From Octopus sinensis (Eukaryota): 64,000 nucleotides of DNA. The notes under the pieces were generated by a model. It saw only the letters and a program-made list of their open reading frames with translations. It ran no database searches and was not told where the DNA came from. Numbering within the stretch: position 1 is the stretch's first letter; each line of letters starts with the position of its first letter. The stretch lies in the NCBI RefSeq assembly GCF_006345805.1, contig NC_043002.1, forward strand, positions 9,486,001-9,550,000, in the 5' to 3' direction. Below are positions 223 to 64,000 of the stretch, piece after piece. Made by a program: the position numbers and the translations under genes.

Positions 223-314
223 CAAAATATAAGTCAGTCCTAGAGCGCACAATGTTCCTAAAGGTCAGCAATGGTCTTCCTCAGTCACAAGTGGATGGCC
301 ATCATCATCATCAT

Positions 315-885
315 GCATGTATGTATGTATGTATTTATGTATGTATGTAGGTATGTATGTATGTATGTATGTAGGTATGTATGTATGTATGTATGTAGGT
401 ATGTATGTATGTATGTATGTATGTATGTACGTATGTACGTATGTATGTATGTATGTATGTACGTACGTACATACGTACGTATGTATGTACGTACGTACGC
501 ATGTATGTATGTATGTATCTGTGTGTGTGCATGTGCATGCATGTATGTATGTATGTATGTATGCATGTATGTATGTATGTATGTATGTATTATGTATGTA
601 TGTATGTATGTATTATGTATGTATGTAGGTATGTATGTATGTATGTATGTAGGTATGTATGTATGTATGTATGTATGTATGTACGTATGTACGTATGTAT
701 GTATGTATGTATGTACGTACGTACATACGTACGTATGTATGTACGTACGTACGCATGTATGTATGTATGTATGTATCTGTGTGTGTGCATGTGCATGCAT
801 GTATGTATGTATGTATATATGCATGTATGTATGTGTGTGTGCATGTGCATGTATGTGTGTGTTCATGTGTATGCATGTATGTATA
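315..885. repeat. (ATGT)n compound microsatellite
   Basis: Directly visible; produces the spurious MYVC/HTYI ORFs. Confidence 0.97.
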
Positions 886-1551
886 TTTGAATCTCTTGAT
901 ATCGCTCGATTGTTATTAACGAATGTCACTCATTTCATATATTCTGCAAATACATATTCTGGCTATGGGGGTAATATTACCTTGATTGCAAACTAGTAAG
1001 GGTCGGTGATAGGAAGGACACCATGCCATGGAAAAATCTGCTTCAATAAACTTCATTCGACCCATGCAGCATGAAGAAGTAGATGTTATAAGTCTAATAT
1101 TGATGATGATGATGATGATGAGTATGATGATGATGATGATGGTAGTGATGATGATATGTATGTGTTATCTAAGAAATGTTTAGATAACAAAGTACTGATA
1201 TAGATGCTAAAGAAATAGTTTTTATCTTAAATGGCAGCTAATTCTCACTCTGGTTTTATTAGATAAAGCTGACAGCAAGTCTTTTCATAGTTGTGAAATT
1301 CTTAAGTTTCTACACAAGCATCTAACATTGACCCACTAAAATGTAATAGATTCCACAATCTCCATAATAAAACTTTTGAAAAAATTAGGTCTGAAGGCAG
1401 TAGTATAAATTAAAAAAAAAATTTGCTCTTTACTTGAAAGATGGAAAGAAATATACAATCAAAATTTTCTAGGACAGGAAAGACCCTAAGTAAAAGGAAT
1501 TTTATGATTTTGTTTTCAATCTTAATGACACATTGGAAAAGATAACATTAA

Positions 1552-5484: not shown

Positions 5485-6335
5485 GAATTTAAGACTGGTT
5501 GCCATTGGAAGCTCCTCTATGCCAATGACTGCTAGAGTTCAGGAAGACATTTCAGGTGGGGAAGGAAGCACTGGGATCTAAGGGCATTAGAGTTAATTTA
5601 GCAAAGACCAAAGCACTAGTAAGCAGGAAAGCTGACCTCTTTAGGGAAATGCCCCTGTTCAATATATAGAAAAAGTGTAGGTAGAAATTCTATATGGTTT
5701 GCTCAGTGAAAGCTATGGACCTATAAGAGGTGTATAGAATCTCAGTGGGGTCCTTAGGGGTAGTAGACAGTGTTCATTGACTAGATGACCAAATTAGCTG
5801 TGGAGGAGATTGCACTGAAAGGGTAGTTGCTAGAATAAGTACTAGCTGGATAAAGTTCAGCGAGCTATTACCTTTGTTGGTAACAAAGGGCCTCACCTTC
5901 AGAGTGAAAAAACAGATTGTATGATGCTTGTGTATAGACAGCTATGCTACATGACAGTAAAACGTGGGCTGTGACTGCTGAGGACATGCAAAGGCTTGAA
6001 AGAAATGAAGCTAGTATGCTTCACTGGGTGAGCAATGTCATTGTGCATGTATGATGAAGTGTAAATGTTTTGAAAAGCATCAGTTGTATTGTGCAAGAGA
6101 GAAAACTGCACCGGTATGGTCATGTAATGCATATGGACGAGGGCAGCTGTGTAAAGAAGTGCTGCTTGGTAAATGTGGGGGGAAAAATTGTTGAAGAGGA
6201 CAAAGTAGTGAGAAATGATCTTGAGATCATTTCTCAACATCTAAAGATGTTGAGGCTCACAGAGAAGATGACAAAGGAGCAAGACAAGTGGCAATTTTCT
6301 CTGCTTGAGAAGGCCCCCCCTCAGCTAATCAAGGG
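5485..6335 (+). mobile_element. Degenerate RTE-clade LINE fragment (RT C-terminal half)
   Basis: WKLLYANDC; AMLHDSKTWAVTAEDMQRLERNEASM; RYGHVMHMDEGSCVKKC; homologous to 7870-9505. Confidence 0.85.
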
Positions 6336-6630
6336 TATAAAGAGATGTCCTTGGATCCCACAACCCATCTTCCTAACACTTTACCCTTTCCTCTGCTCTT
6401 GCTCACCACTGCTCTATTCCTCTTCATTCTTTATGTATACAGTATGTCCTTGTTGAATCTCTTCCTCACTACATACCACTCTGATACCCCCTCCCTTTAT
6501 CTGTGTCCAGTCATTATATTCTCTCCCTCCCCCCAGTTCCCACTCTGCTTTTGCAATCTTGTAAACTCATCTAACCACCCACACCATATAGAATTTCTAC
6601 CTACAGTCCCCAGTTTACTTCACAATATAT

Positions 6631-6850
6631 ATTTCTTTACTACCCACAAGGGGACAAACAAGGACAGACAAACGGATTAAGTTGATTACATCAACCCCAG
6701 TGCGTAATTGGTACTTAATTTATCGACCCCGAAAGGATGAAAGGCAAAGTCGACCTTGGCAGAATTTGAACTCAGAACGTAACGACAGACGAAATACGGC
6801 TACGCATTTCGCCCGGCATGCTAACATTTCTGCCAGCTTGCTGCCTTTTC
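6631..6850 (-). mobile_element. SINE family A (~230 bp, tRNA-like head) with 14-bp TSD
   Basis: TSD ACTTCACAATATAT at 6617-6630 and 6851-6864; body gtcgactttgcctttcatcctttcggggtcgataaattaagtacc in reverse. Confidence 0.92.
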
Positions 6851-7490: not shown

Positions 7491-7869
7491 TACACATAAC
7501 AATTGCTTCTTGTAGGGCTCTATGGAGGGGTTGCCTGAGGTCTCTATCCTTATAACCTTCTTAAGGATAATTTTGTTTTTCATCCTGCAGTTTGTCCCCA
7601 AATCTCTCTCCTTTGTGGAGTTGCTGGATTTAATCACCAACGACTCTGTGATAGCTTGTACAGGATTACCTTTTAGTCAGTAGAGGTCAAGAATGACCTG
7701 GTTGTGTGGTAATAAACCTGCTTCCAACTATGTTCAGTCCCAACGCATGGAATCTTAGGTAAGTGTCTTCTACTATAGTCCTGGGCTGACCAAAGCCTTG
7801 TCAGTGGATTTGATTGACAGAAACTGAAAGAAACCCTTTGTGTATATATACATGTGTGTGTGTGTGTCA

Positions 7870-11810: not shown

Positions 11811-12125
11811 CCCTATATAGATATATATATGATTTTAAAACTGTCATTATTGAGTAGAAAAAAAAGCCTTTTGTCGAAAGGACCAATGAAAAGAAACCAA
11901 TTTCAAATGTGTATCTGTCAATATAAATTGTATATTTTATATATACAAACTGTATTGTTCCATTCTCAGTCTAAACTCTCCAATGAATAGGAACGTGAAA
12001 CTCTGAGTAGCAGTTTATTGTGATTTTTTTTGCAGCTTTAATAATTATAAATCATATTACTCTGTCTCCGGTATTTGAGTACTATTTCTCCCCAACTTGT
12101 TTCACATTTATGTGTTTACTTTGGT

Positions 12126-12223
12126 GTATATATATATATATATATACATACATATATATATATGCATATATATATATGCATATATATATATACATATACA
12201 TATATATACATATTTATACATAT

Positions 12224-12257
<34 letters not shown>

Positions 12258-12286
12258 ATATATATACACATATATATATATACCAC

Positions 12287-12317
<31 letters not shown>

Positions 12318-12367
12318 CCACATATATATATATATACATATATATATACACATATATATATATACAC

Positions 12368-12398
<31 letters not shown>

Positions 12399-12540
12399 CA
12401 CACGTGTATATATGTTTGTATATATATACACACGTGTATATATGTGTGTGTGTATATATATATATATGTGTGTGTGTGTAAATATATGTATATGTGTGTA
12501 TAGGTAAGTGTTTGTATAGGCATGTATGTATGTATGTTCT
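12126..12540. repeat. (TA)n/(CA)n compound microsatellite
   Basis: Directly visible. Confidence 0.97.
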
Positions 12541-12674
12541 TCCAACGTATTTTTATGCCTCTTGAAACTTGAGATTATCTTTAGTTCTTAATAGTTTTTA
12601 ATTGGGATGATATTTGTAATTACGATTGAGACAAAAATACAATATGTTGTTTGCTTAACGTTTTGTTTACTCAT

Positions 12675-13030: not shown

Positions 13031-13694
13031 ATGGCTCGTGAATTTCTAGAGCACTTTTATTTTCGAGGAATAGACGGTGCAGTAGAGAATTCGGGAGGTG
13101 GGACGGGCACTGGATACTGCGGCGGTCCAACGGGAGCAACGACTCCAGACGAAAATGATACGTACAACAATAATCATTTTCAAAACCAGTTGACAAGATC
13201 CCTGAATCCAGTGAGCACGGGCAGCAACGAGAATAACAACACATCGACAGACATGGTGGACGCCATGAAAAAGAAGTGGGTACGCTTACAGGCCAATATT
13301 GATAATATGTTCCAGGGTTTTGGCTTCTCGCAGCCGTTCAACAGGCGCAGAGAAGGAGCAGTGGTGGCGGGCGGAGGAGAAGGTCGCTGCGGAGTGGGAG
13401 GCAGCCTGACGCCAAATGAGAAGAGACGGAACGACAACCTTCATCTTCATCACAGTAACAACCATCGTCGCCACAGCCACTGGGCTGAACACGACGACAC
13501 TCACCTAAACTCATCCAATTCCGATGCCGTGGTTGTTTATCAAGAACAGATTGAAATGGCTCTGCTGAGTCAAGGAGAATTACGACTCGGAGTTGGACAT
13601 GATTTCGTCTTGGAGTTGCGATCTAATCCGACTTGGTGCGACAAATGCGGAGACTTCATCTGGGGAGCCTACAAACAGTGCCTCAAGTGCAAAC
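13031..13694 (+). CDS. RASSF1: First coding exon of a RASSF1/RASSF5-like (C1 domain) gene; ends at a phase-1 donor
   Basis: GVGHDFVLELRSNPTWCDKCGDFIWGAYKQCLKCK fits H-x12-C-x2-C-x13-C and resembles RASSF1A GRGHRF...TWCDLCGDFIWG; EQIEMALL resembles RASSF1A ELIELREL. Donor AAC|GTAAGT at 13694/13695. Family-level call only. Confidence 0.85.
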
Positions 13695-16570
13695 GTAAGT
13701 CAGATCTATTCTTTCTCTGGCCATATGCCAATATATTGATTTAAAAAAGAAAACAGAAAGAACTTTTATACTTCAGTAATATGTCATACGTTGTCTTTTT
13801 TCCTTTCTATGATCTCTTTCTTGCTTTAGCGGCAAAAGTAGCAAAACTGTTATTTCAATCTATTATTTCGATTTTTTAAACTTTTTACAGACTTTTAATA
13901 ATTCCTTGGAACATTCAGTCACGCACAAACTATTCTACAAAGCAAACTAAAAACAATCAAGGCATCGTTTTCATTCATCAAAACTTAATTTTAAAGAATC
14001 AAAACTGTTTAAGTTCAAACTTTGAAACGATTTTATTTCCTAAAACATTCATCAAAAGACTTTCAAATTCTTTAATCGGACGAAATTTAAGTGGATTCGA
14101 TTAAAGCGAAAGTCATTATTGTAGAAAGTAAAAACGAAGTTACTTAGAATATTTACAATTTCCTTTAAAAATGTGGAATAAATTTTAAAAAATTCCGGAT
14201 ATGATTTGTAAGAAAATCAGGAAGTTGTTTGTTTACGTCACCTTTTCGCTATTTTTAGCTTTCATGTGGTTTAAGTTCTTCGTTTTAAAATAAATTCAAC
14301 ACATATTCTTTCGGTAGAATACCGTATGTATGTAGAACAAAATATCTTCTCAGTCTTTTAGGATTTAGTGGTAGAATTAAGGTTCCGTTCTAAGCGGGTT
14401 TTAAGCCATAATCTCGTTCATCCTTTATGATGGATGAAATTGGTTTCAGTCGTTGCCGGGAAGACATACTTTCCCCGACTTAATTCTCATTTTAGCAACA
14501 TGACTTACTTTTTTTTATTTAAAGTCATAGTCTTTTGTGCTGCCAAGGGAAACTAAAAACTAAAAACACGGTCTCTTGCTATTTACAAAATGTTAATTAC
14601 AACATATATTGACTATAAGCGAATAAAATCAACTAAATGTTGCGGATTGTTGTAAATTCGTTTCGATTTTTTTGTGCTTCAGTAATAACACATGGTTAAC
14701 TTTAAATATATATTCTTTTACAATAGCAGTTGCGACTCGAAATATGTCTTTAATTAAAGTACGTGTTTGTGTAAACGTGTTAATTATCTCCATGCAGTAA
14801 ATTCTCTCTCTGCTGGCAATTATATACAAATGTATATATATATATATTTATGACATATATTCATATTTGATCTCATAATTCCTTTTACAAGAATAGTGTC
14901 CGTTTTTCGAAACGATAATATTAAAGAAATTAAGATTTGGTTTATTTTCCTAATTGATATTTCTTTATCTTTGCTGCTTGAAAAATTTTAAAGGCAACTT
15001 TTTAGATTTTATATATATATATTTTAAGTTTTTGTCTGTTAGTCACAAACAATAATTTTGAATATCTGAACATGTGATTCTACTTGAAATAATTAGTGCT
15101 ACATCGCTTAAATGCAGTGGCATTAAAATATCTGAATATTATTGTAAAATACACGTGTTTGAAAAAAGACTAAGGCTTGTTCTTTAAAAGTTTTAGTAAA
15201 TGGGGATGCCGTTTGAAGTGAAATGCTATATTTTAGGGTAATTGATAAAATTGATTTGAGTCACTGATGTTCCAGTTTCTTACAACAAAAGACTGATAAA
15301 CTTAAAACATTTAATAGAATATAACAGCTGATCTCTTTGCGATTGTATCAAAAAGGAATTTTTGTATTTCCTTTTGAATTTCGTTGACTATTTTGCTACA
15401 TTAGTTTCTGTCGAGAATATATAAAAACTTATATTAAAATGGTGACATTTAAAAAGAGATTTAATTTAAAGGGAAACAAATGTCATTATGTTAACTACAC
15501 GGTCTGGGTTTATATTTACGTCTAGAGCATACCATACTTAGTTATTGATCATGGTTATATATATATATATCTAATATTTTTATGTTGGTGTAAGGTCAGT
15601 GCGACACGCCTTACATTACCAGCCGTTTTCTTATCCATTAACTATATCAGCTAGATCAATACTCAACCCTTTCATATGTTTCTTTGATCAGCATCTCTAG
15701 CTTCACCTAATTGTACCATATTCTCGACTATACCATAATTATTTATTACTCTTCTCTTTAATAACACTGGATTGTCTGCAATTTACCGTATGTTCGTTAA
15801 AACCTTATTCACTAATGTACTAGATTTACCATTTAATTTAGTTCGTAGAGAATTCATTTTTGACAAAATTAGACTGGTTAAATCACACCCTTTTCCCTTG
15901 GATCATGTGTTTAAAGCTGCCTACTACTACTTAAAATCAACTATAGGATCGGTAGCTATTTCTAAATACAGGGTAAATCGATGCAAACAGACTACACGCA
16001 AAGTCTTTCATGCTGTGTCTGTGACCCGTTTTAAACTAAGGCATCTAAGCAATCACAACATTCTTTATTTCTTCCTTAAAATAATAATCATCCAAATATT
16101 ACACACACACACACAATAAAATGTACCTAACATGAAGAAACTGAGTTATACAGGGACAAGAAATCTTAAGGATATTTTCGATCCTTCTAGTTTGTTTTAG
16201 TTAAAAAAAAAACGTCATTTCTATTCTGAATGAAACCTATACTAAACAAAGTTTACTTTTCTTGTTTGTTTGTGATTCATTTTATATTCAGAATTAATTG
16301 TAGTGGAAAAGTAATGCAACATTTAACATTACACATATGAATGTATAAAGTGGATTAAAACCTTTGTAACTAGCAGTAGGGCATAACCAAATAGAACATC
16401 TAAGTACTAGAAGCCACTGACACCAGAAAGTAGTGTTAAATATCATTTTTCAAAAATCAACTACAGTAAGCACAAAAAAACATATCTTCATCTAGAGCAC
16501 AACTTCGACCTTTTCCATTCATCAGATATGAGAAAAGCTACAGGGAAATCAGGGATGAAAAGTATCAGGG

Positions 16571-24070: not shown

Positions 24071-24360
24071 CCTTTTATAATGGTGTTTATAAGCCTCTTT
24101 CTTTGCAGAATCATTAAATGCAAGTGTACCGTCATCAAAGCAGACACATTTCTTTCCTGTGACATGATTTCCTCTCACAGTCCAAAACACTTCAGTTCTC
24201 TGCTCCTCACATTGCAGAACATAGGCAAACTTCTTTTCTGCTTCTCTCCTGGCTTCCCCTCTGGTGATCTTATACAGTTTCCTGCTGTCCCAACACTTCT
24301 AGTCCTTCCAGGCCTGTTTCTTTGCTCTAATGGCCTTGTCTGCAGCATCATTCCTATTAC

Positions 24361-24586
24361 TATTTCTTTACTACCCACAAGGGGCTAAACACAGAGGGGA
24401 CAAACAAGGACAGACAAACAGATTAAGTCCATTATATCGAGCCCAGTACATAACTGGTACTTATTTAATCGACCCCGAAAGGATGAAAGGCAAGGTCGAC
24501 CTCGGCGGAATTTGAACTCAGAATGCAACGGCAGATGAAATATGGCTACGCATTTCGCCCGGCGTGCTAACGTTGCTGCCAGCCCT
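24361..24586 (-). mobile_element. SINE family A
   Basis: Family A sequence in reverse orientation. Confidence 0.9.
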
Positions 24587-25260: not shown

Positions 25261-25579
25261 GTCATTGAATATCCCAGTTCTGTCACTGTCCCAATTCCTC
25301 CATAATAAGTCACAAAGAACACACAAGCTAATGAGAGACCTTCAGCATGGTTGCTTGATCTGCTAGAAAAAGCAACGAAATGTCCATTAAAAGAAATGAC
25401 AATTGTCATTTTCTGATAGTTCACCTTGTTAGCTTCTGTTATCGCTACTGAGAATCTATAGGCATACAGAAATAGGGGATAGTGGAGGGGGTGAGACATT
25501 GCTCCTTTCCAGTTTAACCACTAAGGATGGTCCTTAGCTACACAAAGACCTGATATACCTGGAATAATGTTCATGCCAT

Positions 25580-25944
25580 ATCTGTATGTATGTGTGTGTA
25601 TGTGTATATATGTATGCATGTATATATGTGTACATATTACATGTATATATATGTATATATATATATATCTACACATACATGTATACACATACATCTATAT
25701 CTATAGAAATACATCTATACACATACATGTATACATATGCAGGTATACATATGCAGCTATACATATACAAGTATACACATACATGTATACATATATATAT
25801 ATATATACATGTATACATATACATGTATATATATATATATACATATACATGTATATATATATATATACATATACATGTATATATATATATACATGTATAT
25901 ATATACATGTATATATATATACATGTATATATACATGCATATAT

Positions 25945-25982
<38 letters not shown>
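25580..25982. repeat. (TA)n/(TACA)n microsatellite
   Basis: Directly visible. Confidence 0.97.
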
Positions 25983-25983
<1 letters not shown>

Positions 25984-26359
25984 AATTTAAATTTAAAATA
26001 TTAAGAGTGAAAAATTGAATGTTAATTTGATTAATATGAATTTAAAACCTGTGGTGTAGCATATAAGGCCAAAGCTATTTTTATATTTTTGAAACATTTA
26101 GAGTTATATTTTGTATTCTACTCCTTGCTTGTTTCTTTGTTTCTTCAACATATTCAAATTTTATTACCAATAATCTCTTAGTGGCTGTAAGCAGTTAAAA
26201 GGATTAAGAGCTATATGTAAAAATTCGTAATTTTGTTTAGGTCAAATCCCTACCATTTTGGTTTAGAGTGTGTGTGGGGCGTGAATCAGGTCATGCTCAG
26301 GTTGTTATTTAACATCAAGTACAACCTGAATAAAACAGTCCACTCACTTGGCAATAATG

Positions 26360-26770
26360 AGTTGCACCTGGTATTTCAAAGTGTCAGCCTTGTCACATTC
26401 TGTGTCATGCTGAATCTCCCTGAAAACTACATTAACCCTTTCGTTACCAACCCGGCCAAAACCGGTTCTGGCTCTGTAGTACAAATGCCTTGTTTTCATA
26501 AGTTCTGAATTAAAATCTCCCACCAAACCTTATTCACAACTTATGTTCCTAACACTAGTTTAATGATAACTAAGTTATTTTACTAAATTCTTGGTTATAT
26601 TTAAAATTAACTGAAAGAAACACAGAGCATCTCAAAATAAATACAGTAACAAAAGGGTTAAGGGTTCATGTTTCTGTGGAGTGCTCAGCCACTTGCACAT
26701 TGATTTCACGAGCAGGCTGTTCCGTTCATCGGACCAACTGGAACCCTCATTGCCATAACTAACGGAGTGT
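26360..26770 (+). mobile_element. SINE family C, 5'-truncated, split by a MITE
   Basis: The flanks on either side of the MITE join into a sequence collinear with 11640-11810. Confidence 0.8.
26436..26657. mobile_element. piggyBac-type MITE (family 1)
   Basis: TTAA at 26432-26435 and 26658-26661; TIR CCCTTTCGTTAC / GTAACAAAAGGG; inverse of 63362-63582. Confidence 0.92.
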
Positions 26771-30636: not shown

Positions 30637-30869
30637 AAGGTGGCGAGCTGGCAGAATCGTTAGCACGCCGGGCGAAATGCGTAGCCGTATTTCATCTGTC
30701 GTTACGTTCTGAGTTCAAATTCCCCCGAGGTCGACTTTGCCTTTCATCCTTTCGGGGTCGATAAATTAAGTACCAATTATGCACTGGGGTCAATATAATC
30801 AACTTAATCTGTTTGTCTGTCCTTGTTTGTCCCCTCTGTGTTTAGCCCCTTGTGGGTAGTAAAGAAATA
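30637..30869 (+). mobile_element. SINE family A with 17-bp TSD
   Basis: TSD GGTATATAAACTTGTTC at 30620-30636 and 30870-30886. Confidence 0.95.
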
Positions 30870-31394
30870 GGTATATAAACTTGTTCTATCATTATTGTGA
30901 ATGTTTATGAACTGAATTTTGTTAATGCAAGCCAATATTAGTTTCCTTAGACTTCTCTGTTTTTCTTTCTATCCTGAAGAAGGAATTACTATGGCGTAGT
31001 TTGCTCTGACCTGAAAATATTGGGCCTCACAAACGAGAGGATGATGTAAGATAAAGACAATTGCTGACGTGCAAATCTGTTTAATTTATGCCTGAACATG
31101 AAGACACACATTAGCTTGATAATAATTTTGGAAATAATAAGTGTGATATGTAGGTGTAATTTCAATGCTTCTGTCTTTAACTTGCATTTGCTTCTTGAAT
31201 ATAAATCATACCACTTCCGTTATGAAAACATGGGTGAGGAGAATGAAATTTGAAACAAACTTGAGGATTGTTAGTATCTCATTTTTCCTCAGTGAAGAAA
31301 ACATATTCATCAGTATACCAACTCTTGATGAATCACAGAAACTTCTCTTAACCTATTCACAAGGGTTGAGAGAAGTTTTGTTTGAGAAGTCTTT

Positions 31395-51481: not shown

Positions 51482-51742
51482 TGTCATTTTATCTGTAACT
51501 GGAAATATTAAACTTCTATTAATATTTTCTGAAAATAGAAGAGAAATAGTGATCAGATTTTGTAGATATGGAAATTATTTGTACATGATAATTTAAGTCT
51601 ACTAAACTGTTAGATTAGTAAAAATGAGCCCTAATTTATTTCTTATATAATGTTATATCTTAATTACATTACAAATCAAAAAATGCCAGTTGAGGTTTTT
51701 GAAATAGTTTTTTGGATATAAAGATGTTAATAGCATTATATA

Positions 51743-51964
51743 TTTCTTTACTACCCACAAGGGGCTAAACACAGAGGGGACAAACAAAGACAGACAAACG
51801 GATTAAATCGATTATATCGACCCCAGTGCGAAACTGGTACTTTATTTATCGACCCCGAAAGGATGAAAGGCAAAGTCGACCTCGGCGGAATTTGAACTCA
51901 GAATATAACGGCAGACGAAATATGGCTACGCATTTCGCCCGGTGCGCTAACGTTTCTGCCAGCT
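51743..51964 (-). mobile_element. SINE family A
   Basis: Family A sequence in reverse. Confidence 0.9.
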
Positions 51965-55600: not shown

Positions 55601-55989
55601 ATCTGTTTATTTGTATATATATTAATTATTTGAGGGAATATTATTCTTAACTTAAAGGGAAAAATTCAATTTAGAAATACTAAATCAAATTTCATATATC
55701 TATGATATATACATATATTTATGATATATATATATATATATATATGGTAACATATATATCCATGATATATATTTATAAGTAAGAGCAAAAGAAAAAATTT
55801 CTAATGCCAAAATATGCCGAAAATAGACACAACGCCAATAACCATGTAATTTATCACTACAAGCATGTGTAGTGCTTGTAGTGATATATCCATTATATAT
55901 ATATATATATATATATACATGTCAGAGATGTTGTCATAGTTTACAATTAATAAATAATTTTTATTAATTATGACTCCATTTTCTCCTCA

Positions 55990-55994
55990 TTCTT

Positions 55995-56028
<34 letters not shown>

Positions 56029-56097
56029 ATATATATATGTGTATATATATGTGTGTATATATATATGTGTATATATATGTGTGTATATATATGTGTG

Positions 56098-56142
<45 letters not shown>

Positions 56143-56297
56143 GTATATGTGTATGTATGTATATGTGTGTATGTATATATGTGTATGTATATATGTGTAT
56201 GTATATATATGTATGTATATGTATGTATGTATATGTATGTATATGTATGTATATGTATGTATGTATATGTATGTATGTATATGTATGTATGTATATG

Positions 56298-56350
<53 letters not shown>

Positions 56351-56451
56351 GTATGTATGTATGTATATGTATGTATATGTATGTATGTATATATATGTAT
56401 GTATGTATATATATGTATGTATGTATATATATGTATGTATGTATATATATG

Positions 56452-56490
<39 letters not shown>

Positions 56491-56735
56491 GTATGTATAT
56501 ATGTATGTATATATGTATGTATGTATGTATATATGTATGTATGTATGTATATATGTATGTATGTATGTATGTATATATATATGTATGTATGTATATATAT
56601 GTATGTATGTATATATATGTATGTATGTATATATATGTATGTATGTATATATATGTATGTATGTATATGTATGTATGTATATATATGTATGTATGTATAT
56701 ATATGTATGTATGTATGTATATATATGTATGTATG

Positions 56736-56766
<31 letters not shown>

Positions 56767-56791
56767 ATATATGTATGTATGTATATATATG

Positions 56792-56830
<39 letters not shown>

Positions 56831-57048
56831 GTATATATATATGTATGTACATATATGTATGTATATATATATGTATGTACATATATGTATGTATATATAT
56901 ATATGTATGTACATATATGTATGTATATATATATATGTATGTATATATATGTATATATATATATATGTATGTATGTATTATATGTATGTATATATATATA
57001 CATGTATGTATGTATATATATGTATGCATATATATACATGTATGTATG

Positions 57049-57110
<62 letters not shown>

Positions 57111-57115
57111 TATTC
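55990..57115. repeat. 1.1-kb (TA)n/(ATGT)n compound microsatellite
   Basis: Directly visible; source of the 300-400 aa spurious ORFs. Confidence 0.97.
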
Positions 57116-57479
57116 TTCTATATGTTTCAGCCATGAGGCTGTTATCATGCTGGGGCACTGCCATTGTAATTACCTTTTAATTGGCCAATTCTCTGGGTCT
57201 GGCTTTTGGTGAGAGGGGGGGGTTCGATATTGCTGCCCTCTGTTGAATTTCTTCCCTTGACATTGATTCATCCTGGATCATGGATAGTAAGAGGTCATGA
57301 TTTTATCCAGAAGCGTCACATAGTAGTACTAATATAAACTAATGTTACCTAAGTCACTATGAAGCTCAGAAGTTGCTATACTTTAATTTTACATTAGAAA
57401 CTGACCATATTCAACTTATGGTAAGGTGATGGTTAATTATTAGACTTATTGATATTTTGCTTTAACTCTTTATGTCCTG

Positions 57480-57952: not shown

Positions 57953-58419
57953 TTTACTTTACCTTTCATCCTTCTAAGGTCCATGAAATAAAGTCCCAGT
58001 CAAGTACTAGAGTCAATTTAATTTGTCCACCTCAAAATATGTGCCCTTGTACCAATTTTATATCAAATTTGTTAAATCTATGTCCAGTAACCACTTCATA
58101 CACTATTTCTGTTAAAGTCTCATTTCTCAAAAGCTGGAATATTATTTCAGATGATATTTTTGCTTTATTTTTTTAATAATTGCTAATTTGAACATTTTTT
58201 CACACCAAGTGAGGAAGGTGAAACCATTGATATGTCATACTTCTAATAATAGTGATGAAAGTTATGCATTCAGTTTTGTGAAATAAATTTGACGTTTTAT
58301 GTCTCAGGATTTGAAAATTTTCATGCAAATAGCCACATATATATAAAATTGAATATTATTTGAAATTATTGTCATCCTTTGATATCTGTTTTTACATGCT
58401 GCCATGGGTTGCAGTAGCT

Positions 58420-58815
58420 GTTTGTTTGTTTGTTTGTTGAGCGAAGCGGTCTTTTGTCCCAGAGCTTGCAAGATCACGCTTCTAGTGGAAGTCCGAAATG
58501 TGGTCCTTTGCTATTCGTAAGACCCGCAGAAGAGAAAGCAGGTCAACCCCCGACACTGAGAGCATCGACGGATGGATGAATGCGCATCCAGGCTCAGCGG
58601 TTGCGTAGGAAGTTGGGGACAAGAAACAAAAAGAAAGAGTGAGAGAAAGTTGGAGCGAAAGAGTACAACAGGGAGCGCCACCACCCCCTGCCGGAGCCTC
58701 GTGGGGCTTTAGGCGTTTTTGCTCAATAAACACATGCAACGCCCGGTCTGGGAATCGAAACCGTGATCCTCCGACCGCGAGTCCGCTGCCCTAACCACTG
58801 GGCCATTGCGCCTCC
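58420..58815 (-). mobile_element. tRNA-head SINE family D, full length, (AAAC)n tail
   Basis: A box TGGCCCAGTGG and B box GGTTTCGATTCC on the minus strand. Confidence 0.9.
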
Positions 58816-60280
58816 TGCAGTAGTTGTCAGGAAATTGTTTTACTACAACTATTTGTGATATTTTGTTTTGAACTTGGTATAATGTCTAAGTTTACAACAG
58901 TTTAAAGTAGTCTTCCATGGGAGCTACCAAATTTGGCTGCTATTTGAGAAAACCTGTTTACTGGAGAGGTTGGAGAGAAAATATTGTTTTCCTTGGGTTC
59001 AGAGCTACAATTGAAATATTAGGATTCTCATCTCTTCATTGCATATCAACCTGTCTACATTGTATTTCAATTACATTGTTTTATTTTAAGCGTGTGATTT
59101 ACAGTAGTGGTTCTTAAATGTTTTGCCCTTTTTCTCATTATCAATGAGAAAATAGAATTTGCTTCTGTATAATTTTTCTATGTTGGATAAACTCAAAAGT
59201 TTAAAACTATTACACTTCACTTCAAATTAAATCCTTAGATGATTTGACAGCATTTTTACCTCTGCATTGTTGCCTAACTTGCAAGGAATTCGTAGCCATA
59301 TCTCCCTCAAATACTAAAAAATGGTTAAATATACAGGATAAACTAATACTGTATATGGATATACAAGAAATAAGAAGGCAAGATGACCATGGCTAAAATG
59401 CTGGTTGAACAATAAATGTTTGACTTACAGAAAGATTTCTTGCAGAAAATGTAAATGTTGTCAGGGAGTGACAGAAGTTACCACTCCGCATGAAATAGGC
59501 TCTAAAAATCCTATAAATGTGTCTTACAGAGTCTTCAGTATACTAACAAAAACCCCACCAAACAACAACATATACAAATGATCCAGAAAACACAGGACTA
59601 CAGGAAACTAACTCTGACAACAATAAAAACAGGAAGCACTATTATTTCCCTTCCCAATGTTACATGGCTGTACAGAATGCATTTAAGAAATAATAGGTTA
59701 ACACACAACAATAAGCTCTGTAGACTTGATACTAGATTCTGTAATACAGTACTAATGACACTAAGCGCTTCCTTTATGGAACTGAAAAATTTTATCTCCA
59801 CTCGTGACATTGATGTAGCAGTAATTCAGGAAACTCCGTATACCGTAACACTGAACATCCACCATTTTAAATTATAATCATCGTTAGACACTGGAAGTGA
59901 TTTTTATAAAACACACAAACAGGTTGCATTCAGTGTCACAAATAACATTTGTAACTTCAAAAAGTCTCATTTTTTTTTCCCTGGTAAATCTGAATTAACC
60001 AAAATGTTTAACGAGTGTTCCGAGAATTGAAGTCACATGACTTACAGTCTCTGTCCGTTTCTTTCTTTATCTTTCAGAATTCTCTTCAAAAACTAAAATT
60101 ACAAAATCAAAACAAATGTCTTGGATTCAATTAAAAGCTGACTGATATATAATGAAGGAATAGTAATTAATTAATTATCAAGATCGATATATTTCTGGAT
60201 TTGAGTCATTTATTTCTATTATATGAGATTGATCAAACATTGTTTTGTTTTTGTTGAACAAGTTTGTGTTTTGTGATACC

Positions 60281-60783
60281 TGTGCCAGTGACACGTAAAA
60301 AGCACCAACCGATCGTGGCTGTTGCCAGCCTCCCCTGGCACCTGTGCCGGTGGCACGTAAAAAGCACCATCCGGACGTGGCTGATGCCAGCGCCACCTTG
60401 ACTGACTTCTGTGCCGGTGGCACGTAAAAAGCACCAACCGATCATGGCCGATGCCAGCCTCCCCTGGCACCTGTGCTGGTGGCACGTAAAAAGCACCATC
60501 CGAACATGGCTGACACCAACGTTGCCTTGACTGGCTTCTGTGCCGGTGGCACATAAAAAGCACCAACCGATCGTGGCTGATGCCAGCCTACCCTGGTACC
60601 TGTGACAGTGGCACGTAAAAAGCACCCACAACACTCTCGGAGTGGTTGGCGTTTGGAAGGGCATCTAGCTGTAGAAACATTGTCAGATAAAACTGGAGCC
60701 TGGTGCAGCCTCCTGGCTTCCCAGACCCTGGTCGAACCGTCCAACCCATGCTAGCATGGAAAATAGACATTAAATGATGATGA
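60281..60783 (+). mobile_element. RTE 3' UTR with alternating 62/67-bp array and tail
   Basis: Units start at 60281, 60343, 60410, 60472, 60539 and 60601. Confidence 0.9.
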
Positions 60784-60919
60784 AACTAAGAGGGAGCAAT
60801 GCTACTCTAGAAACACAGGCTTCTAAATAAAAACTAGCAACATGATGTATGATATTCTATTATGTATTTCAGCCCTAAGGCTGGGGCACCGCCATATTAA
60901 TAAACATATATTTAATACC

Positions 60920-61334
60920 TATTTCTTTACTACCCACAAGGGGCTACACACAGAGAGGACAAACAAGGACAGACAAAGGGATTAAGTTGATTATATCAAC
61001 CCCAGTGCGTAACTGGTACTTAATTTATCGACCCCGAAAGGATGAAAGGTAAAAGTCGACCTCGGCAGAATTTGAACTCAGATTGTAACAGCAGACGAAA
61101 TACCTATTTCTTTACTACCCACAAGGGGTAAACACATAGAGGACAAACAAGGACAGACAAACGGATTAAGTCGATTATATCGACCCCTGCGCGTAACTAG
61201 TACTTAATTTATCGACCCCGAAAGGATGAAAGGCAAAGTCGACCTTGGTGAAATTTGAACTCAGAATGTAGCGGCAGACGAAATACGGTTACGCATTTCA
61301 CCCTATGTGCTAACGTTTCTGTCAGCTTGCCGCC
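60920..61334 (-). mobile_element. Head-to-tail SINE family A dimer
   Basis: Full unit 61108-61334 plus 5'-truncated unit 60920-61107; near-TSD TATATTTAATACC / TATATTTAATTCC. Confidence 0.85.
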
Positions 61335-61900
61335 TATATTTAATTCCACTGATCTTGCCAACCCTCCCACATCACAGCTATAGTTCATTAATAGTTCACA
61401 AACGCTATTTTTGATAGGAGACTTTGGTGCTTTCAAATAACAAGAAAGGGTGATTTTTATGTCATTGCAATTACACATCCTTTGTGGTCCTAAGCAGTTT
61501 ACATCTGCTTTCATTGATACACAGATATGTTACCAAATTAACTACAACTTTTTCTTGAACATTATCTTCTGTTCCACACACCTAACTATTCCACAGCTTC
61601 CATCGTATCATCTGCCAATTATTGCATCACAGTTATACATCAGTGAAGAAAGTAAAAACACTTTTACAAACTTTAATAAAAGCTCAATACAATGAGTTCT
61701 GCAAAGAAAACAGAATCAAAGTTTTCAGAATTAACCAACCCTACGGTCACCGTCAAAGACAATGATTCAACAAAATAATTAATTACAAACAAAAAAAAAA
61801 ACTAAATAAAACCCCACAAATATCCCACAAAGCAATCTAAAAAAATATAACTTGGTTACATACTAGCATAGCCAACCTCATAATAAAACAAAACAGAAAT

Positions 61901-62340
61901 GCTGTAGAAACATTGTCAGATAAAACTGGAGCCTGGTGCAGCCTCCTGGCTTCCCAGACCCTGGTCGAACCGTCCAACCCATGCTAGCATGGAAAATAGA
62001 CATTAAATGATGATGAAACTAAGAGGGAGCAATGCTACTCTAGAAACACAGGCTTCTAAATAAAAACTAGCAACATGATGTATGATATTCTATTATGTAT
62101 TTCAGCCCTAAGGCTGGGGCACCGCCATATTAATAAACATATATTTAATACCTATTTCTTTACTACCCACAAGGGGCTACACACAGAGAGGACAAACAAG
62201 GACAGACAAAGGGATTAAGTTGATTATATCAACCCCAGTGCGTAACTGGTACTTAATTTATCGACCCCGAAAGGATGAAAGGTAAAAGTCGACCTCGGCA
62301 GAATTTGAACTCAGATTGTAACAGCAGACGAAATACCTAT
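61901..62340 (+). repeat. 440-bp direct duplicate of 60668-61107
   Basis: Apparently identical by eye, including the unique spacer between RTE tail and SINE. Confidence 0.9.
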
Positions 62341-62559
62341 ATATCAATGCAAGCCTATAGAGATAGTTTAGACCATGTGATGGAGATGGAGAGAGAGTCC
62401 TGTATGCCAAAACTATCACACTGTACCTCATACAATTCATCACTGTATGTTGGAAGTTATGTTGTTGCTATCTTAATGGAAGTATGATGATATAGCTGGA
62501 AAGATGGATCCATTGGCTGTACTTTGTTGTCAATCAGAGCTGACCTGGGCTCTGCAAGA

Positions 62560-62750
62560 GTGACAACTTGCTGGGGCTGCCTGCTGGAGCCTAGTGGCAG
62601 GTATTTAAAGGGAAAAATTTTGACAAGTCAGTCAGTCGCTGGCTGACACTCGTTGATGCTACACCGAAGAGGCCAGGGAACAGAAGAAAGAAGACATGCA
62701 CCCAACACCACGTGTTTCGTAGCAGACCACGAAACACGGTTGTAATTCCT
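62560..62750 (+). repeat. Internally deleted copy of the 51169-51481 repeat
   Basis: Shares both ends and lacks about 51320-51445. Confidence 0.8.
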
Positions 62751-63052
62751 TCCTAAGAAAGAAAGAAGTTAGATATAGGTTCACACTTATTTAGTTAAAA
62801 TCGAGACTAAATAAAAAGAACATATTTTTAAATGAATATTTTTGAGAGAAAAAGAATACATGAGTACCTTGTAGGGGTTTAGAATTGATGCTAGTTTTAC
62901 TATAGAGGGAGGGAGCAAAAATAAATACAATGTGAAAAAAGTTTGATTTGAATTTTACCAAATGGTTTTGTACTTTATAATATCATTGTCCTTTTCTTTT
63001 TTTATAAGATGGATTCAATTTCTACTATATTGTTATTTACTCTTTATTTTCC

Positions 63053-63115
63053 TACTAAATACTTTTTTTTTCTTTTTCAGGTAAGTCAATATTTATGAAG
63101 ATTTTTCGGGTAAGG
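63053..63115 (+). other. Candidate recursive splice site with RS-exon 63081-63109
   Basis: TACTAAA branch-like motif, 17 pyrimidines (63062-63078), CAG|GTAAGT, second donor CGG|GTAAGG at 63109/63110. Confidence 0.7.
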
Positions 63116-63361
63116 TTGAAATCTTATGATCCAGGGCATTTTTCATGAATGTTGAGAATAGATTTTAGTGAGGTGCTATTGCAGAGCACTCATTTGTAAA
63201 CAGTTGTAAGTCATTGGCCTGCAAAATTTAAAACTGTTAGAGCAGTGGCTGAGCCTAAACTTCTGGCCCTGCGTTCAGGGTTGAAGGCTTTTGCTAACAG
63301 TAATTTCTGTAAGTACACATAACATCCTGTTTGTATCAGTTGATCTTCTTACCCTCATTAA

Positions 63362-63582
63362 CCCTTTCGTTACTGTATTTATTTTGAGATGCTCTGTGTT
63401 TCTTTCATTTACTTTAAATATAACAAAGAATTTAGTAAAATAACTTAGTTATCATTAAGCTAGTGTTAGGAACGTAAACTGTGACTAAGGTTTGGTGGAA
63501 GATTTTAATTCAAAACTTATGAAAACAAGACATTTGTACAACAGAGCCAGAGCCGGTTTCAGCTGAGTTGGTAACGAAAGGG
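63362..63582. mobile_element. piggyBac-type MITE (family 1), intact
   Basis: TTAA at 63358-63361 and 63583-63586; perfect TIR CCCTTTCGTTAC / GTAACGAAAGGG. Confidence 0.95.
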
Positions 63583-64000
63583 TTAAAGTGTTACTGTCCT
63601 AAAAAAAATAGTATTCCAATAATTCTTGTAAATGTTTAAATTGACAGTGCTATCCAACCAATACTGGAAATTGTAAATAAACAAATAAGAAAACTATCTC
63701 TTGAGATGGGATTGAATCAGTGAAAATTCTGTTGAATATATAAGCTGGAGTATGTAAAGGTTTTGTGAATCGCAACTCAATATCTTAGCTTTAGTTTTCT
63801 TTCACTGGAAGATGTGTAAATGATGTGTACATTTTAATTATGAAATGCATTTTTATTATACTGTTTTAATTACAGCAATTATTATTTTGTAAAAACATTG
63901 GTACATTTACTATCATATGGGAAGATAAAAAGTCAGGTTGCCCCGAGGTGAGTTAAGTCTGATGATTGAAATACCTAAAATATTATTGGTTCTAGTATTT

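What the first reader, a model, noticed from the sequence alone, without database searches (positions are those of the whole stretch)
63053..63115. Recursive-splicing (ratchet) site with a cryptic RS-exon in a >50-kb intron of a probable cephalopod gene
Seen: on the RASSF sense strand, about 49.4 kb after the donor at 13695, there is TACTAAA (63053-63059), 17 unbroken pyrimidines, CAG, and immediately GTAAGT, the same hexamer as the real donor. A second donor (CGG|GTAAGG) 29 nt later defines a short exon that would shift the frame if included. Established: a 3'ss fused to a consensus 5'ss plus a short downstream cryptic exon is the recursive-splicing architecture in long Drosophila and vertebrate introns. 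Inference: this intron is removed stepwise. I know of no report of this in molluscs, but could not check. It is the only such strong AG|GTAAGT I found in the intron.
Basis: partly seen in the sequence, partly recalled or inferred. Interest (0 to 1): 0.85.

Follow-up and report, generated by a model that had tools for sequence, protein, structure and literature searches.

The report
Candidate recursive splice site, octopus RASSF intron
Deep inside a very long intron of an octopus RASSF1/5-like gene lies a strong acceptor fused to a copy of the gene's own donor; public gene models already splice exon 1 to it, so it is a credible but unproven site of stepwise (recursive) intron removal, a known mechanism not yet reported in molluscs.

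Summary
It is the only such site on either strand of the window, and chance expectation is about 0.0005-0.02.

The window is Octopus sinensis. Exon 1 (13031-13694) encodes the N-terminus and the first 32 of 53 C1-domain positions of a RASSF1/5 orthologue. Exon 2 is absent for at least 59 kb.

The key new fact: joining 13694 to 63081 reproduces RefSeq XP_036359527.1 exactly. The same join in O. bimaculoides reproduces XP_052824733.1. So the acceptor is already annotated as an exon start, probably from RNA-seq.

The site is identical in O. bimaculoides, 13 kb rather than 49 kb from exon 1. However, the two genomes are too similar (93% locally) for this to show constraint.

The second step, re-splicing from the regenerated donor, is untested. 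The downstream donor pairs with U1 at least as well, so inclusion of the frameshifting 29-nt exon, or a dead-end product, remains possible.

Verdict: a real, probably used splice site with full recursive-splicing architecture. Recursive function is plausible (about 0.5). It would be a new member of a known kind, of moderate interest.

The parts
13031..13694 (+). Exon 1 coding part of the Octopus sinensis RASSF1/5 orthologue (221 codons + 1 nt, phase 1). It holds the first 32 of 53 positions of the C1 zinc finger.
   Evidence: ORF. Pfam C1_1 positions 1-32/53. 100% match to XP_036359527.1 residues 1-221. 51% identity to a full-length cuttlefish RASSF mRNA product over residues 1-247.
13695..13702 (+). 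Natural exon 1 donor, AAC|GTAAGTCA.
   Evidence: The donor position and phase are the same in O. bimaculoides and in the cuttlefish contig.
62754..63361 (+). Single-copy intronic block that carries the site. It is flanked by O. sinensis repeat insertions and is 93.1% identical to O. bimaculoides L002 23394-23999.
63053..63059 (+). Branch-point-like TACTAAA. The candidate branch A at 63058 is 22 nt before the AG. O. bimaculoides has TTCTAAC here.
   Evidence: The branch function is inferred from the consensus only.
63062..63078 (+). Polypyrimidine tract of 17 unbroken pyrimidines (15 in O. bimaculoides).
63079..63080 (+). Acceptor AG. The junction 13694^63081 is used by RefSeq XP_036359527.1.
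   Evidence: The in-silico join reproduces the RefSeq protein exactly. The gene range 13031-63148 on CM016864.1 agrees.
63081..63088 (+). Recursive donor GTAAGTCA. After the first splice it recreates AAC|GTAAGTCA, identical to the natural exon 1 donor over 11 nt.
63081..63109 (+). 29-nt candidate RS-exon. It is frameshifting if included and identical in O. bimaculoides.
63110..63115 (+). Downstream donor CGG|GTAAGG that would close the RS-exon.
   Evidence: U1 duplex energy is -10.8 kcal/mol, against -5.7 for the regenerated donor.
63081..63148 (+). Segment annotated by RefSeq as the terminal coding exon of LOC118763816 (tail RKSIFMKIFRVRLKSYDPGHFS, stop TGA 63146-63148). It reads through the 63110 donor.

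Best explanation
The site is a real, used intronic acceptor built as a recursive-splicing (ratchet) site with a cryptic RS-exon.

Proposed course of events:
1. As the RASSF1/5-like pre-mRNA is transcribed, the 29-nt unit 63081-63109 is recognised as a tiny exon. It is bounded by the acceptor 63080 (branch near 63058, 17-nt pyrimidine tract) and the donor at 63110.
2. Exon 1 (donor 13694|13695) is spliced to 63081. This removes the first 49.4 kb (13.1 kb in O. bimaculoides) as a lariat.
3. The splice places GTAAGTCA directly behind exon 1 and recreates the exon 1 donor AAC|GTAAGTCA base for base.
4. That regenerated donor then competes with the 63110 donor for the acceptor of the true exon 2, which lies beyond the window.
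5. If the regenerated donor wins, no trace is left in the mRNA (recursive removal). If the 63110 donor wins, a 29-nt frameshifting exon is included and the C1-containing isoform is destroyed.

Shown: the motif, its rarity, its identity in a second species, and the exon1^63081 junction in public gene models.

Inferred: exon definition across the 29-nt unit, the branch point, and the whole second step.
For: 1. The anatomy is complete and unique in 70 kb of O. sinensis and 50 kb of O. bimaculoides, on both strands. Chance expectation is 0.0005-0.02.
2. It lies on the sense strand of an intron of at least 59.4 kb that splits the C1 domain. The rest of the domain is not in the window or in L001.
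3. Joining 13694^63081 gives XP_036359527.1 exactly. The orthologous join gives O. bimaculoides XP_052824733.1 (isoform X2) exactly. The simpler alternative for a predictor is read-through to a nearby stop, as in the other O. bimaculoides RefSeq model, XP_014783266.1 (222 aa). A 49-kb intron chosen for a 22-codon tail therefore points to RNA-seq junction support (inference).
4. A model that runs from the junction straight through the 63110 donor is how an RS intermediate looks to an annotator.
5. The regenerated donor equals the proven natural donor over 11 nt.
6. AG|GTAAGT, the 29-nt unit and the second donor are identical in O. bimaculoides. Meanwhile the upstream segment changed from 13 to 49 kb through a 34-kb block specific to O. 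sinensis.
7. There is no positionally conserved poly(A) signal downstream, and signal density equals the intron background. This argues against a dedicated terminal exon.
8. The architecture matches published RS-exons: short (~50 nt), out of frame, with donor competition (PMC8605326; PMC6224609).
Against: - There is no direct evidence for the second step: no lariat, saw-tooth or intermediate-to-mRNA chase.
- I saw gene models, not reads. The 2022 O. bimaculoides model may have been seeded by the 2020 O. sinensis protein, so the two may not be independent.
- No annotation in four cephalopods joins exon 1 to exon 2. The exon1^63081 product may therefore be at least as visible as the mature junction, as expected for a dead-end product.
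- Other cryptic acceptors in the same intron are also annotated: O. bimaculoides X1 at L002 40659 and O. vulgaris at window 14681|14682.
- By U1 pairing the downstream donor (-10.8 kcal/mol) is stronger than the regenerated donor (-5.7). In flies and mammals that favours inclusion of the RS-exon over recursion (PMC8605326, PMC6224609).
- The conservation is uninformative. The 67-nt perfect run over the core is only the 7th longest in 18.8 kb of aligned sequence, nearly all of it non-coding.
- No RS-like motif occurs in the first 37 kb of the cuttlefish intron.
- 29 nt is short for exon definition.
Confidence: 0.5

Rival explanations
1. Unproductive cryptic exon. The strong acceptor at 63080 captures the exon 1 donor, but the product is not re-spliced from the regenerated donor. 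Either transcripts stay as exon 1 plus downstream intron and are terminated or degraded (a cryptic last exon), or the 29-nt unit is spliced on through the 63110 donor as a poison exon that frameshifts the message. In both cases the site lowers output of the C1-containing isoform rather than helping to remove the intron.
For: - RefSeq annotates 63081-63148 as a terminal coding exon in two species.
- No annotation links exon 1 to exon 2.
- Two further cryptic terminal exons are annotated in the same intron in sister species, so cryptic acceptor use is common here.
- The downstream donor pairs with U1 better than the regenerated donor. Donor-competition rules then predict inclusion (PMC8605326, PMC6224609).
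- EJC deposition can repress regenerated donors (PMC6224609).
Against: - The regenerated donor is identical to the constitutive exon 1 donor, so it is demonstrably competent.
- There is no conserved or enriched poly(A) signal downstream.
- The truncated protein would lack the last zinc ligands of the C1 finger, so it is unlikely to be a selected isoform.
- The split annotations are as well explained by the great length of the intron.
Confidence: 0.3
2. Chance motif plus annotation artefact. The acceptor|donor fusion arose by chance in AT-rich intron sequence and is not used in vivo. The RefSeq models picked it because it is the best-scoring acceptor within reach, and the second species' model was copied by protein homology.
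For: - At 0.0005-0.009 expected per 50-kb strand, a genome of this size should hold many chance copies.
- Conservation between the two Octopus species is at the background level.
- No Logan RNA-seq-derived ORF carrying the junction was found.
- No equivalent motif occurs in 37 kb of the cuttlefish intron.
Against: - A predictor without evidence would hardly prefer a 49-kb intron and a 22-codon exon over simple read-through. Read-through is what the other O. bimaculoides RefSeq model, XP_014783266.1, does.
- O. bimaculoides carries the junction as one of two named isoforms. To my knowledge Gnomon issues named isoforms only with transcript support.
- The joint occurrence of a branch motif, a 17-Y tract, CAG|GTAAGT and a second donor at 29 nt has an expectation of about 1e-5 to 1e-3 for this intron.
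Confidence: 0.13
3. U1-binding site for telescripting. The intronic CAG|GTAAGT serves mainly to recruit U1 snRNP and suppress premature cleavage and polyadenylation in the long intron. The adjacent acceptor would then be incidental.
For: In the unspliced context the site is a near-perfect U1 target (-12.1 kcal/mol, against -14.1 for the consensus). The intron carries about 1.6 poly(A) hexamers per kb.
Against: This does not explain the 17-nt pyrimidine tract, the branch-like motif, the second donor or the annotated use of the acceptor. One site in about 60 kb would give little protection.
Confidence: 0.04

Closest known systems
Drosophila intronic ratchet points with cryptic RS-exons (Ubx, kuz, Bx; Hatton 1998, Burnette 2005, Duff 2015, Joseph 2018; summarised in PMC8605326 and PMC6110457)
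   Same: Shared features: the (Y)nNCAG|GTAAGT fusion on the sense strand of a long intron; a short cryptic exon closed by a downstream donor; exon content out of frame; and a host gene with a very long first coding intron.
   Different: - The RS-exon here is 29 nt, against roughly 50 nt in flies.
- The regenerated donor (AAC|GTAAGT) is not stronger than the RS-exon donor by U1 pairing. Fly ratchet-point donors usually win.
- Fly sites are 'ultraconserved' across the genus. Conservation here could only be tested against one close relative and is at background level.
- No RNA evidence of the second step is available.
Vertebrate cryptic RS-exons in long neuronal genes (CADM1/2, ROBO2, NCAM1 and others; Sibley 2015, cited from memory and through PMC6224609)
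   Same: An RS-exon is defined first and spliced to the preceding exon. It reconstitutes a 5' splice site. The outcome is set by competition with the downstream 5' splice site. Inclusion introduces a frameshift or premature stop, acting as a binary switch.
   Different: The host gene is a RASSF tumour-suppressor-type adaptor, not one of the known RS genes. The animal is a lophotrochozoan. The role of EJC repression in molluscs is unknown.
Poison cassette exons and cryptic last exons in long introns
   Same: A strong intronic acceptor captures the upstream donor, and the product encodes a truncated protein (243 aa with a broken C1 finger). It is annotated as a terminal exon in RefSeq.
   Different: An ordinary cryptic exon has no reason to begin with a perfect copy of the upstream donor. 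There is also no conserved poly(A) signal behind it.

Membership tests
Recursive splice site (ratchet point) with RS-exon | Juxtaposed acceptor and donor, (Y)nNCAG|GTAAGT, with a pyrimidine tract and no intervening AG | tested here: met
   17 Y + CAG|GTAAGT at 63062-63086. It is the only instance in the window on either strand.
Recursive splice site (ratchet point) with RS-exon | Lies on the sense strand inside a long intron (tens of kb), not at an annotated coding exon of the mature mRNA | tested here: met
   The site is 49,386 nt after the exon 1 donor. The rest of the C1 domain (exon 2) is absent up to window-equivalent 73148, so the intron is at least 59.4 kb. The full-length cuttlefish mRNA product goes straight from ...CLKCR to HCQYTCH with no insert.
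Recursive splice site (ratchet point) with RS-exon | A downstream 5' splice site that defines a short cryptic RS-exon | tested here: met
   CGG|GTAAGG at 63110 gives a 29-nt unit. A GGTRAG within 15-100 nt occurs in 3% of intron windows. This is shorter than the ~50 nt typical in flies (PMC8605326).
Recursive splice site (ratchet point) with RS-exon | RS-exon content is out of frame or carries a stop, so it must be skipped | tested here: met
   1 + 29 nt = 10 codons. A phase-1 exon 2 would then be read out of frame. The phase of exon 2 is taken from the cuttlefish mRNA product.
Recursive splice site (ratchet point) with RS-exon | The regenerated 5' splice site is strong enough to outcompete the RS-exon donor | tested here: inconclusive
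   The regenerated AAC|GTAAGTCA equals the functional natural donor. However, its U1 duplex energy is -5.7 kcal/mol, against -10.8 for CGG|GTAAGG. This is a crude measure, and no MaxEnt model or Octopus training set was available.
Recursive splice site (ratchet point) with RS-exon | Junction between the upstream exon and the RS site is seen in RNA (first step) | tested here: inconclusive
   RefSeq models in O. sinensis and O. bimaculoides use exactly this junction. The underlying reads could not be inspected, and the two models may not be independent. No Logan-derived ORF with the junction was found.
Recursive splice site (ratchet point) with RS-exon | Second-step evidence: a lariat starting at the RS donor, a saw-tooth in nascent RNA, and loss of the RS-exon from the mRNA | not testable with these tools
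Recursive splice site (ratchet point) with RS-exon | The acceptor|donor core is conserved above the flanking intron | tested here: inconclusive
   The core is identical in O. bimaculoides. But the block is 93% identical overall, and the 67-nt perfect run ranks 7th among runs in 18.8 kb of aligned sequence, nearly all non-coding. A more distant octopod (L005-L007, 80-83% identity) could not be reached at this region. No motif was found in 37 kb of the cuttlefish intron.
Recursive splice site (ratchet point) with RS-exon | Genome-wide sense-strand enrichment of the motif in long introns of the species | not testable with these tools
   Only about 190 kb of cephalopod sequence was available. It gives 1 sense and 0 antisense per Octopus locus, and those are the same orthologous site.
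Alternative or cryptic last exon | A functional, conserved cleavage/polyadenylation signal shortly downstream of the stop | tested here: not met
   The first AATAAA is at +595 nt in O. sinensis and at +76 and +276 in O. bimaculoides. These positions are not shared, and the density equals the intron background of 1.6 per kb.

The most novel reading that the evidence does not exclude
This is a functional ratchet point. Octopuses would then remove at least this giant intron in two steps through a 29-nt RS-exon. That would be the first recursive splice site in a mollusc or any lophotrochozoan. It would imply that the RS-exon mechanism predates the protostome-deuterostome split and is available for the exceptionally long, repeat-inflated introns of cephalopods. 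Here the site has kept its role while the upstream segment grew from 13 to 49 kb.
Probability: 0.45. Interest if true: 0.55.

Novelty: new member of a known kind. Interest (0 to 1): 0.35.

Why it matters
If validated, it would extend recursive splicing from insects and vertebrates to lophotrochozoans. In the literature I could search, the only evidence from other animal groups is motif enrichment in sea urchin (PMC2773006). It would also give a concrete, testable locus in animals whose genes have unusually long, transposon-filled introns.

There is an immediate practical point that holds whichever explanation is right. RefSeq 'uncharacterized protein LOC118763816' (O. sinensis) and 'transcription factor stalky isoform X2' (O. 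bimaculoides) are not genes of their own. Each is exon 1 of the RASSF1/5 orthologue joined to an intronic splice site, with the RA/SARAH part of the gene annotated separately. Splicing intermediates or cryptic exons of this kind may cause split or truncated gene models elsewhere in cephalopod annotations.

Tried and rejected
- Exon 2 upstream of the site: I searched all six frames of the window for the remaining C1 ligands (C-x4-H-x2-C-x5-9-C). There was no sense-strand hit. The same search was negative in L001-L003, and tblastn with the cuttlefish and abalone proteins found only exon 1. Rejected.
- The site as part of a repeat or transposon: 62760-63357 has no second copy in the window or in the other loci, only the orthologue. 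The flanks are repeats. Rejected for the sequence available.
- Structured RNA or tRNA-derived element: no Rfam hit in 58000-64000 and no tRNA. A 28-nt, 75% inverted repeat could pair with the pyrimidine tract (62848-62875 / 63051-63078). Its changes in O. bimaculoides are not compensatory by my reading, so I treat it as chance.
- Conservation as proof of function: the run-length comparison shows it is not above background.
- Transcript evidence in assembled public reads: two protein searches for ORFs carrying the junction tail (full-length and a 79-aa piece) returned only the RefSeq cluster.
- Full-length Octopus RASSF: none was found among hits to the cuttlefish protein. P0204 / L011 turned out to be another mollusc's mRNA.
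- Exact-pattern scan of JGI metagenome contigs for the core: 0 hits.
- Walking the 92.9-kb cuttlefish contig by successive gene look-ups reached 45.7 kb, with no RS-like motif on the sense strand of the intron. I stopped for lack of look-ups.
- A Markov simulation of the intron timed out. It was replaced.
- Two papers (PMC6709686, PMC4471124) are not held.

Full report
**1. The observation**

- TACTAAA lies at 63053-63059.
- An unbroken tract of 17 pyrimidines lies at 63062-63078.
- CAG is at 63078-63080, followed at once by GTAAGT at 63081-86.
- A second donor, CGG|GTAAGG, has its GT at 63110, which delimits a 29-nt unit (63081-63109).
- No AG lies between the branch-like motif and the acceptor.
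- The upstream donor is AAAC|GTAAGT with its GT at 13695, 49,386 nt away.

**2. Is it more than chance?**

- AGGTAAGT occurs three times on the + strand and never on the - strand. The other two copies (7757, 12502) lie upstream of exon 1 and have no pyrimidine tract.
- Among 486 AGGT tetramers on both strands, no other combines a Y-rich upstream 20-mer with five or more matches to GTAAGT.
- Twelve pyrimidines followed by AGGTAAGT gives 1 match against 0.00 expected in 100 dinucleotide-preserving shuffles.
- The looser Y8-AGGTRAGT gives 1 match against 0.02 expected.
- Shuffles under-represent real pyrimidine tracts, so I also multiplied the real count of Y-tract-AG sites by the real frequency of GTAAGT after AG. 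This gives 0.0005-0.009 expected per 50-kb strand.
- A GGTRAG donor 15-100 nt further on is found in 3% of intron windows.

For this intron the motif is therefore very unlikely by chance. Across a genome of gigabases, tens to hundreds of chance copies are still expected. The motif alone cannot carry the claim.

**3. What the locus is**

- The ORF 13031-13694 matches RefSeq XP_036359527.1 of Octopus sinensis at 100% over residues 1-221. The window lies on CM016864.1 of GCA_006345805.1.
- The exon encodes a low-complexity N-terminus and positions 1-32 of the 53-position C1 domain.
- A full-length cuttlefish product (P0002, 569 aa, from an RNA-seq assembly) continues ...CLKCR|HCQYTCHEKC... into RA and SARAH domains. 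The gene is therefore the cephalopod RASSF1/5 orthologue, and the intron splits the zinc finger in phase 1.
- The remaining C1 ligands are not encoded anywhere on the sense strand of the window. They are also absent from the 9 kb beyond it in L001 and from 40 kb past exon 1 in O. bimaculoides. The intron is at least 59.4 kb in O. sinensis.
- The intron is filled with repeats: LINE reverse-transcriptase/PHD fragments, SINE-like and MITE-like elements, and microsatellites.
- The 600 nt around the site (62754-63361) are single-copy in all sequence available.

**4. The key new fact: the junction is already in public gene models**

- XP_036359527.1 is 243 aa. Its last 22 residues (RKSIFMKIFRVRLKSYDPGHFS) are exactly what results from joining 13694 to 63081 and reading through the second donor to TGA 63146-63148. 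The recorded gene range, 50,118 nt, is exactly the span 13031-63148.
- In O. bimaculoides the same construction (donor GT at L002 10662, acceptor AG ending at 23718) reproduces XP_052824733.1, isoform X2, exactly.
- The easy option for a predictor is to read through into the intron to a nearby stop. The other O. bimaculoides RefSeq model, XP_014783266.1 (222 aa...KRK*), does just that.
- Choosing a 49-kb intron for a 22-codon tail is therefore best explained by spliced-read support. This is an inference. I could not see the reads, and the later O. bimaculoides model could have been seeded by the O. sinensis protein.
- A model that starts at the junction and runs on through the 63110 donor is how a recursive-splicing intermediate would look to an annotator. 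It is also how a cryptic terminal exon would look.

**5. Conservation**

- The orthologous block in O. bimaculoides is 93.1% identical over 610 nt.
- AG|GTAAGT, the whole 29-nt unit, the second donor and the following 33 nt are identical, forming a 67-nt perfect run at 63076-63142.
- The pyrimidine tract is 15 rather than 17 nt. The branch-like motif reads TTCTAAC instead of TACTAAA, and both fit a CTRAY-type branch site.
- This is not evidence of constraint. Orthologous intron blocks are 81-94% identical, and the 67-nt run is only the seventh longest in 18.8 kb of aligned sequence, nearly all of it non-coding.
- One difference is informative. The site lies 13,057 nt from exon 1 in O. bimaculoides and 49,386 nt away in O. 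sinensis. The gap is due to a 34-kb repeat-rich block (25583-59560) that corresponds to only 4.8 kb in O. bimaculoides.
- A more distant octopod is represented by Logan contigs L005-L007 (80-83% identity), but they cover only exon 1 and 2.2 kb of the intron.
- In a cuttlefish-like contig the donor position and phase are the same, but the first 37 kb of the intron hold no RS-like motif on the sense strand. The contig continues for another 47 kb that I could not reach.

**6. Mechanism**

The anatomy matches the published RS-exon model. An RS-exon that begins with a partial donor is defined and spliced to the preceding exon. A 5' splice site is reconstituted at the junction. The outcome is then decided by competition between that site and the RS-exon's own donor (PMC6224609; PMC8605326). 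Drosophila cryptic RS-exons are short, about 50 nt, and out of frame.

- Here the reconstituted site AAC|GTAAGTCA is identical over 11 nt to the natural exon 1 donor, so it is certainly competent.
- By a simple U1 duplex calculation it scores -5.7 kcal/mol. The downstream donor CGG|GTAAGG scores -10.8, and the unspliced site CAG|GTAAGT scores -12.1.
- On the donor-competition rule, skipping of the 29-nt unit is therefore not assured. Inclusion would add RKSIFMKIFR and shift the frame.
- The most likely picture is a site at which exon 1 is first joined to 63081. The regenerated donor is then used, giving recursive removal with no trace. Alternatively the 63110 donor is used, or none, giving an unproductive product.
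- I put about 0.5 on recursion being a substantial outcome, about 0.3 on a purely unproductive cryptic exon, and about 0.13 on an unused chance motif plus annotation artefact.

**7. Points against recursion, stated plainly**

- No annotation in O. sinensis, O. bimaculoides, O. vulgaris or Sepia pharaonis links exon 1 to exon 2.
- Two other cryptic acceptors in the same intron are annotated as terminal exons in sister species: L002 40659, an ordinary PPT-CAG site, and window 14681|14682.
- No assembled public transcript carrying the junction turned up.

Against the terminal-exon reading, poly(A) hexamers downstream are not positionally conserved and occur at background density. The encoded protein would also have a broken zinc finger.

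**8. Comparison with what is known, and novelty**

- Recursive splicing is established in Drosophila and vertebrates.
- Motif enrichment has been reported for other insects and sea urchin (PMC2773006).
- Full-text searches for recursive splicing with octopus, cephalopod or mollusc terms returned no paper on the subject.
- The site would therefore be a new member of a known kind in a new phylum, not a new mechanism.

Membership is incomplete:
- Sequence features: met.
- First-step junction: indicated only through gene models.
- Donor-strength criterion: inconclusive.
- Conservation: inconclusive.
- Second-step and genome-wide criteria: untestable here.

**9. Verdict**

Interest is 0.35. The candidate is well formed, probably used and directly testable. 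It rests on a single locus, the mechanism is already known, and the decisive step is unshown. The firmest practical result is that the RefSeq entries LOC118763816 (O. sinensis) and LOC106867147 isoform X2 (O. bimaculoides) are exon 1 of RASSF1/5 fused to an intronic splice site, not separate genes.

Noticed in passing
window 13031-63148; L002 10001-40751 and 45041 onwards: The RASSF1/5 orthologue is split in public annotations. Exon 1 plus an intronic tail is annotated as its own gene: O. sinensis LOC118763816, O. bimaculoides LOC106867147 ('transcription factor stalky'), O. vulgaris CAI9724936.1 and Sepia pharaonis CAE1142387.1. The RA/SARAH part belongs to a separate downstream model, 1260 aa in O. 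bimaculoides and P0170 in S. pharaonis.
   Followed up: partly
window 25583-59560: This 34-kb block corresponds to only 4.8 kb in O. bimaculoides (L002 17313-22082). It is rich in LINE RT/PHD fragments, SINE-like copies and microsatellites. It accounts for the difference in exon 1-to-site distance (49 kb against 13 kb).
   Followed up: partly
window 60767-61107 and 62000-62340: A 341-nt stretch is duplicated at 100% identity, 1233 nt apart. The region of the second copy has no counterpart in the O. bimaculoides alignment. It is either a very recent duplication or an assembly artefact.
   Followed up: no
window 62144-62336 and at least 11 other places (e.g. 30687-30879, 51741-51922, 24360-24542, 6624-6797): A SINE-like repeat family of about 190 nt with copies 85-92% identical on both strands. 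ARAGORN finds no tRNA in the window.
   Followed up: no
window 63358-63589 (copy at 26429-26661): A MITE-like element of about 230 nt with perfect 16-nt terminal inverted repeats (TTAACCCTTTCGTTAC / GTAACGAAAGGGTTAA). It sits 277 nt downstream of the site. The O. bimaculoides alignment ends where it begins, so it appears absent there.
   Followed up: partly
window 14681|14682: Another cryptic acceptor (TTTTTTTGTGCTTCAG|TAATAACACATGGTTAA) lies about 1 kb into the intron. Its O. vulgaris counterpart is used by that species' annotation to end the protein with LITHG.
   Followed up: partly
L002 40659-40751: O. bimaculoides isoform X1 joins exon 1 to an ordinary PPT-CAG acceptor 30 kb downstream (tail PGQIFGLLTKC...). 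This is downstream of the RS-like site, and the exon does not start with GT.
   Followed up: partly
window 12502-12509 and 7757-7764; cuttlefish contig position 6180: AG|GTAAGT motifs without pyrimidine tracts lie upstream of the start codon. The cuttlefish contig also has TTAG|GTAAGT 1.6 kb upstream of its ATG. These may be donors of 5'-UTR exons.
   Followed up: no
window 62848-62875 / 63051-63078: A 28-nt, 75% complementary inverted repeat could pair a purine-rich stretch with the branch/pyrimidine region of the site. The substitutions in O. bimaculoides are not compensatory, so it is probably chance.
   Followed up: partly
window 271-996, 12020-12545, 25567-26018, 55968-57212: Long (TATG/TACA)n-type microsatellite tracts produce spurious ORFs of up to 398 aa in several frames.
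   Followed up: no
L005-L007 (Logan SRR11869385, SRR11869391, SRR11869390): Contigs from a third, more divergent octopod (80-83% identity) carry exon 1 with 2.2 kb of unspliced intron. This species would be the right distance for a conservation test of the site.
   Followed up: partly
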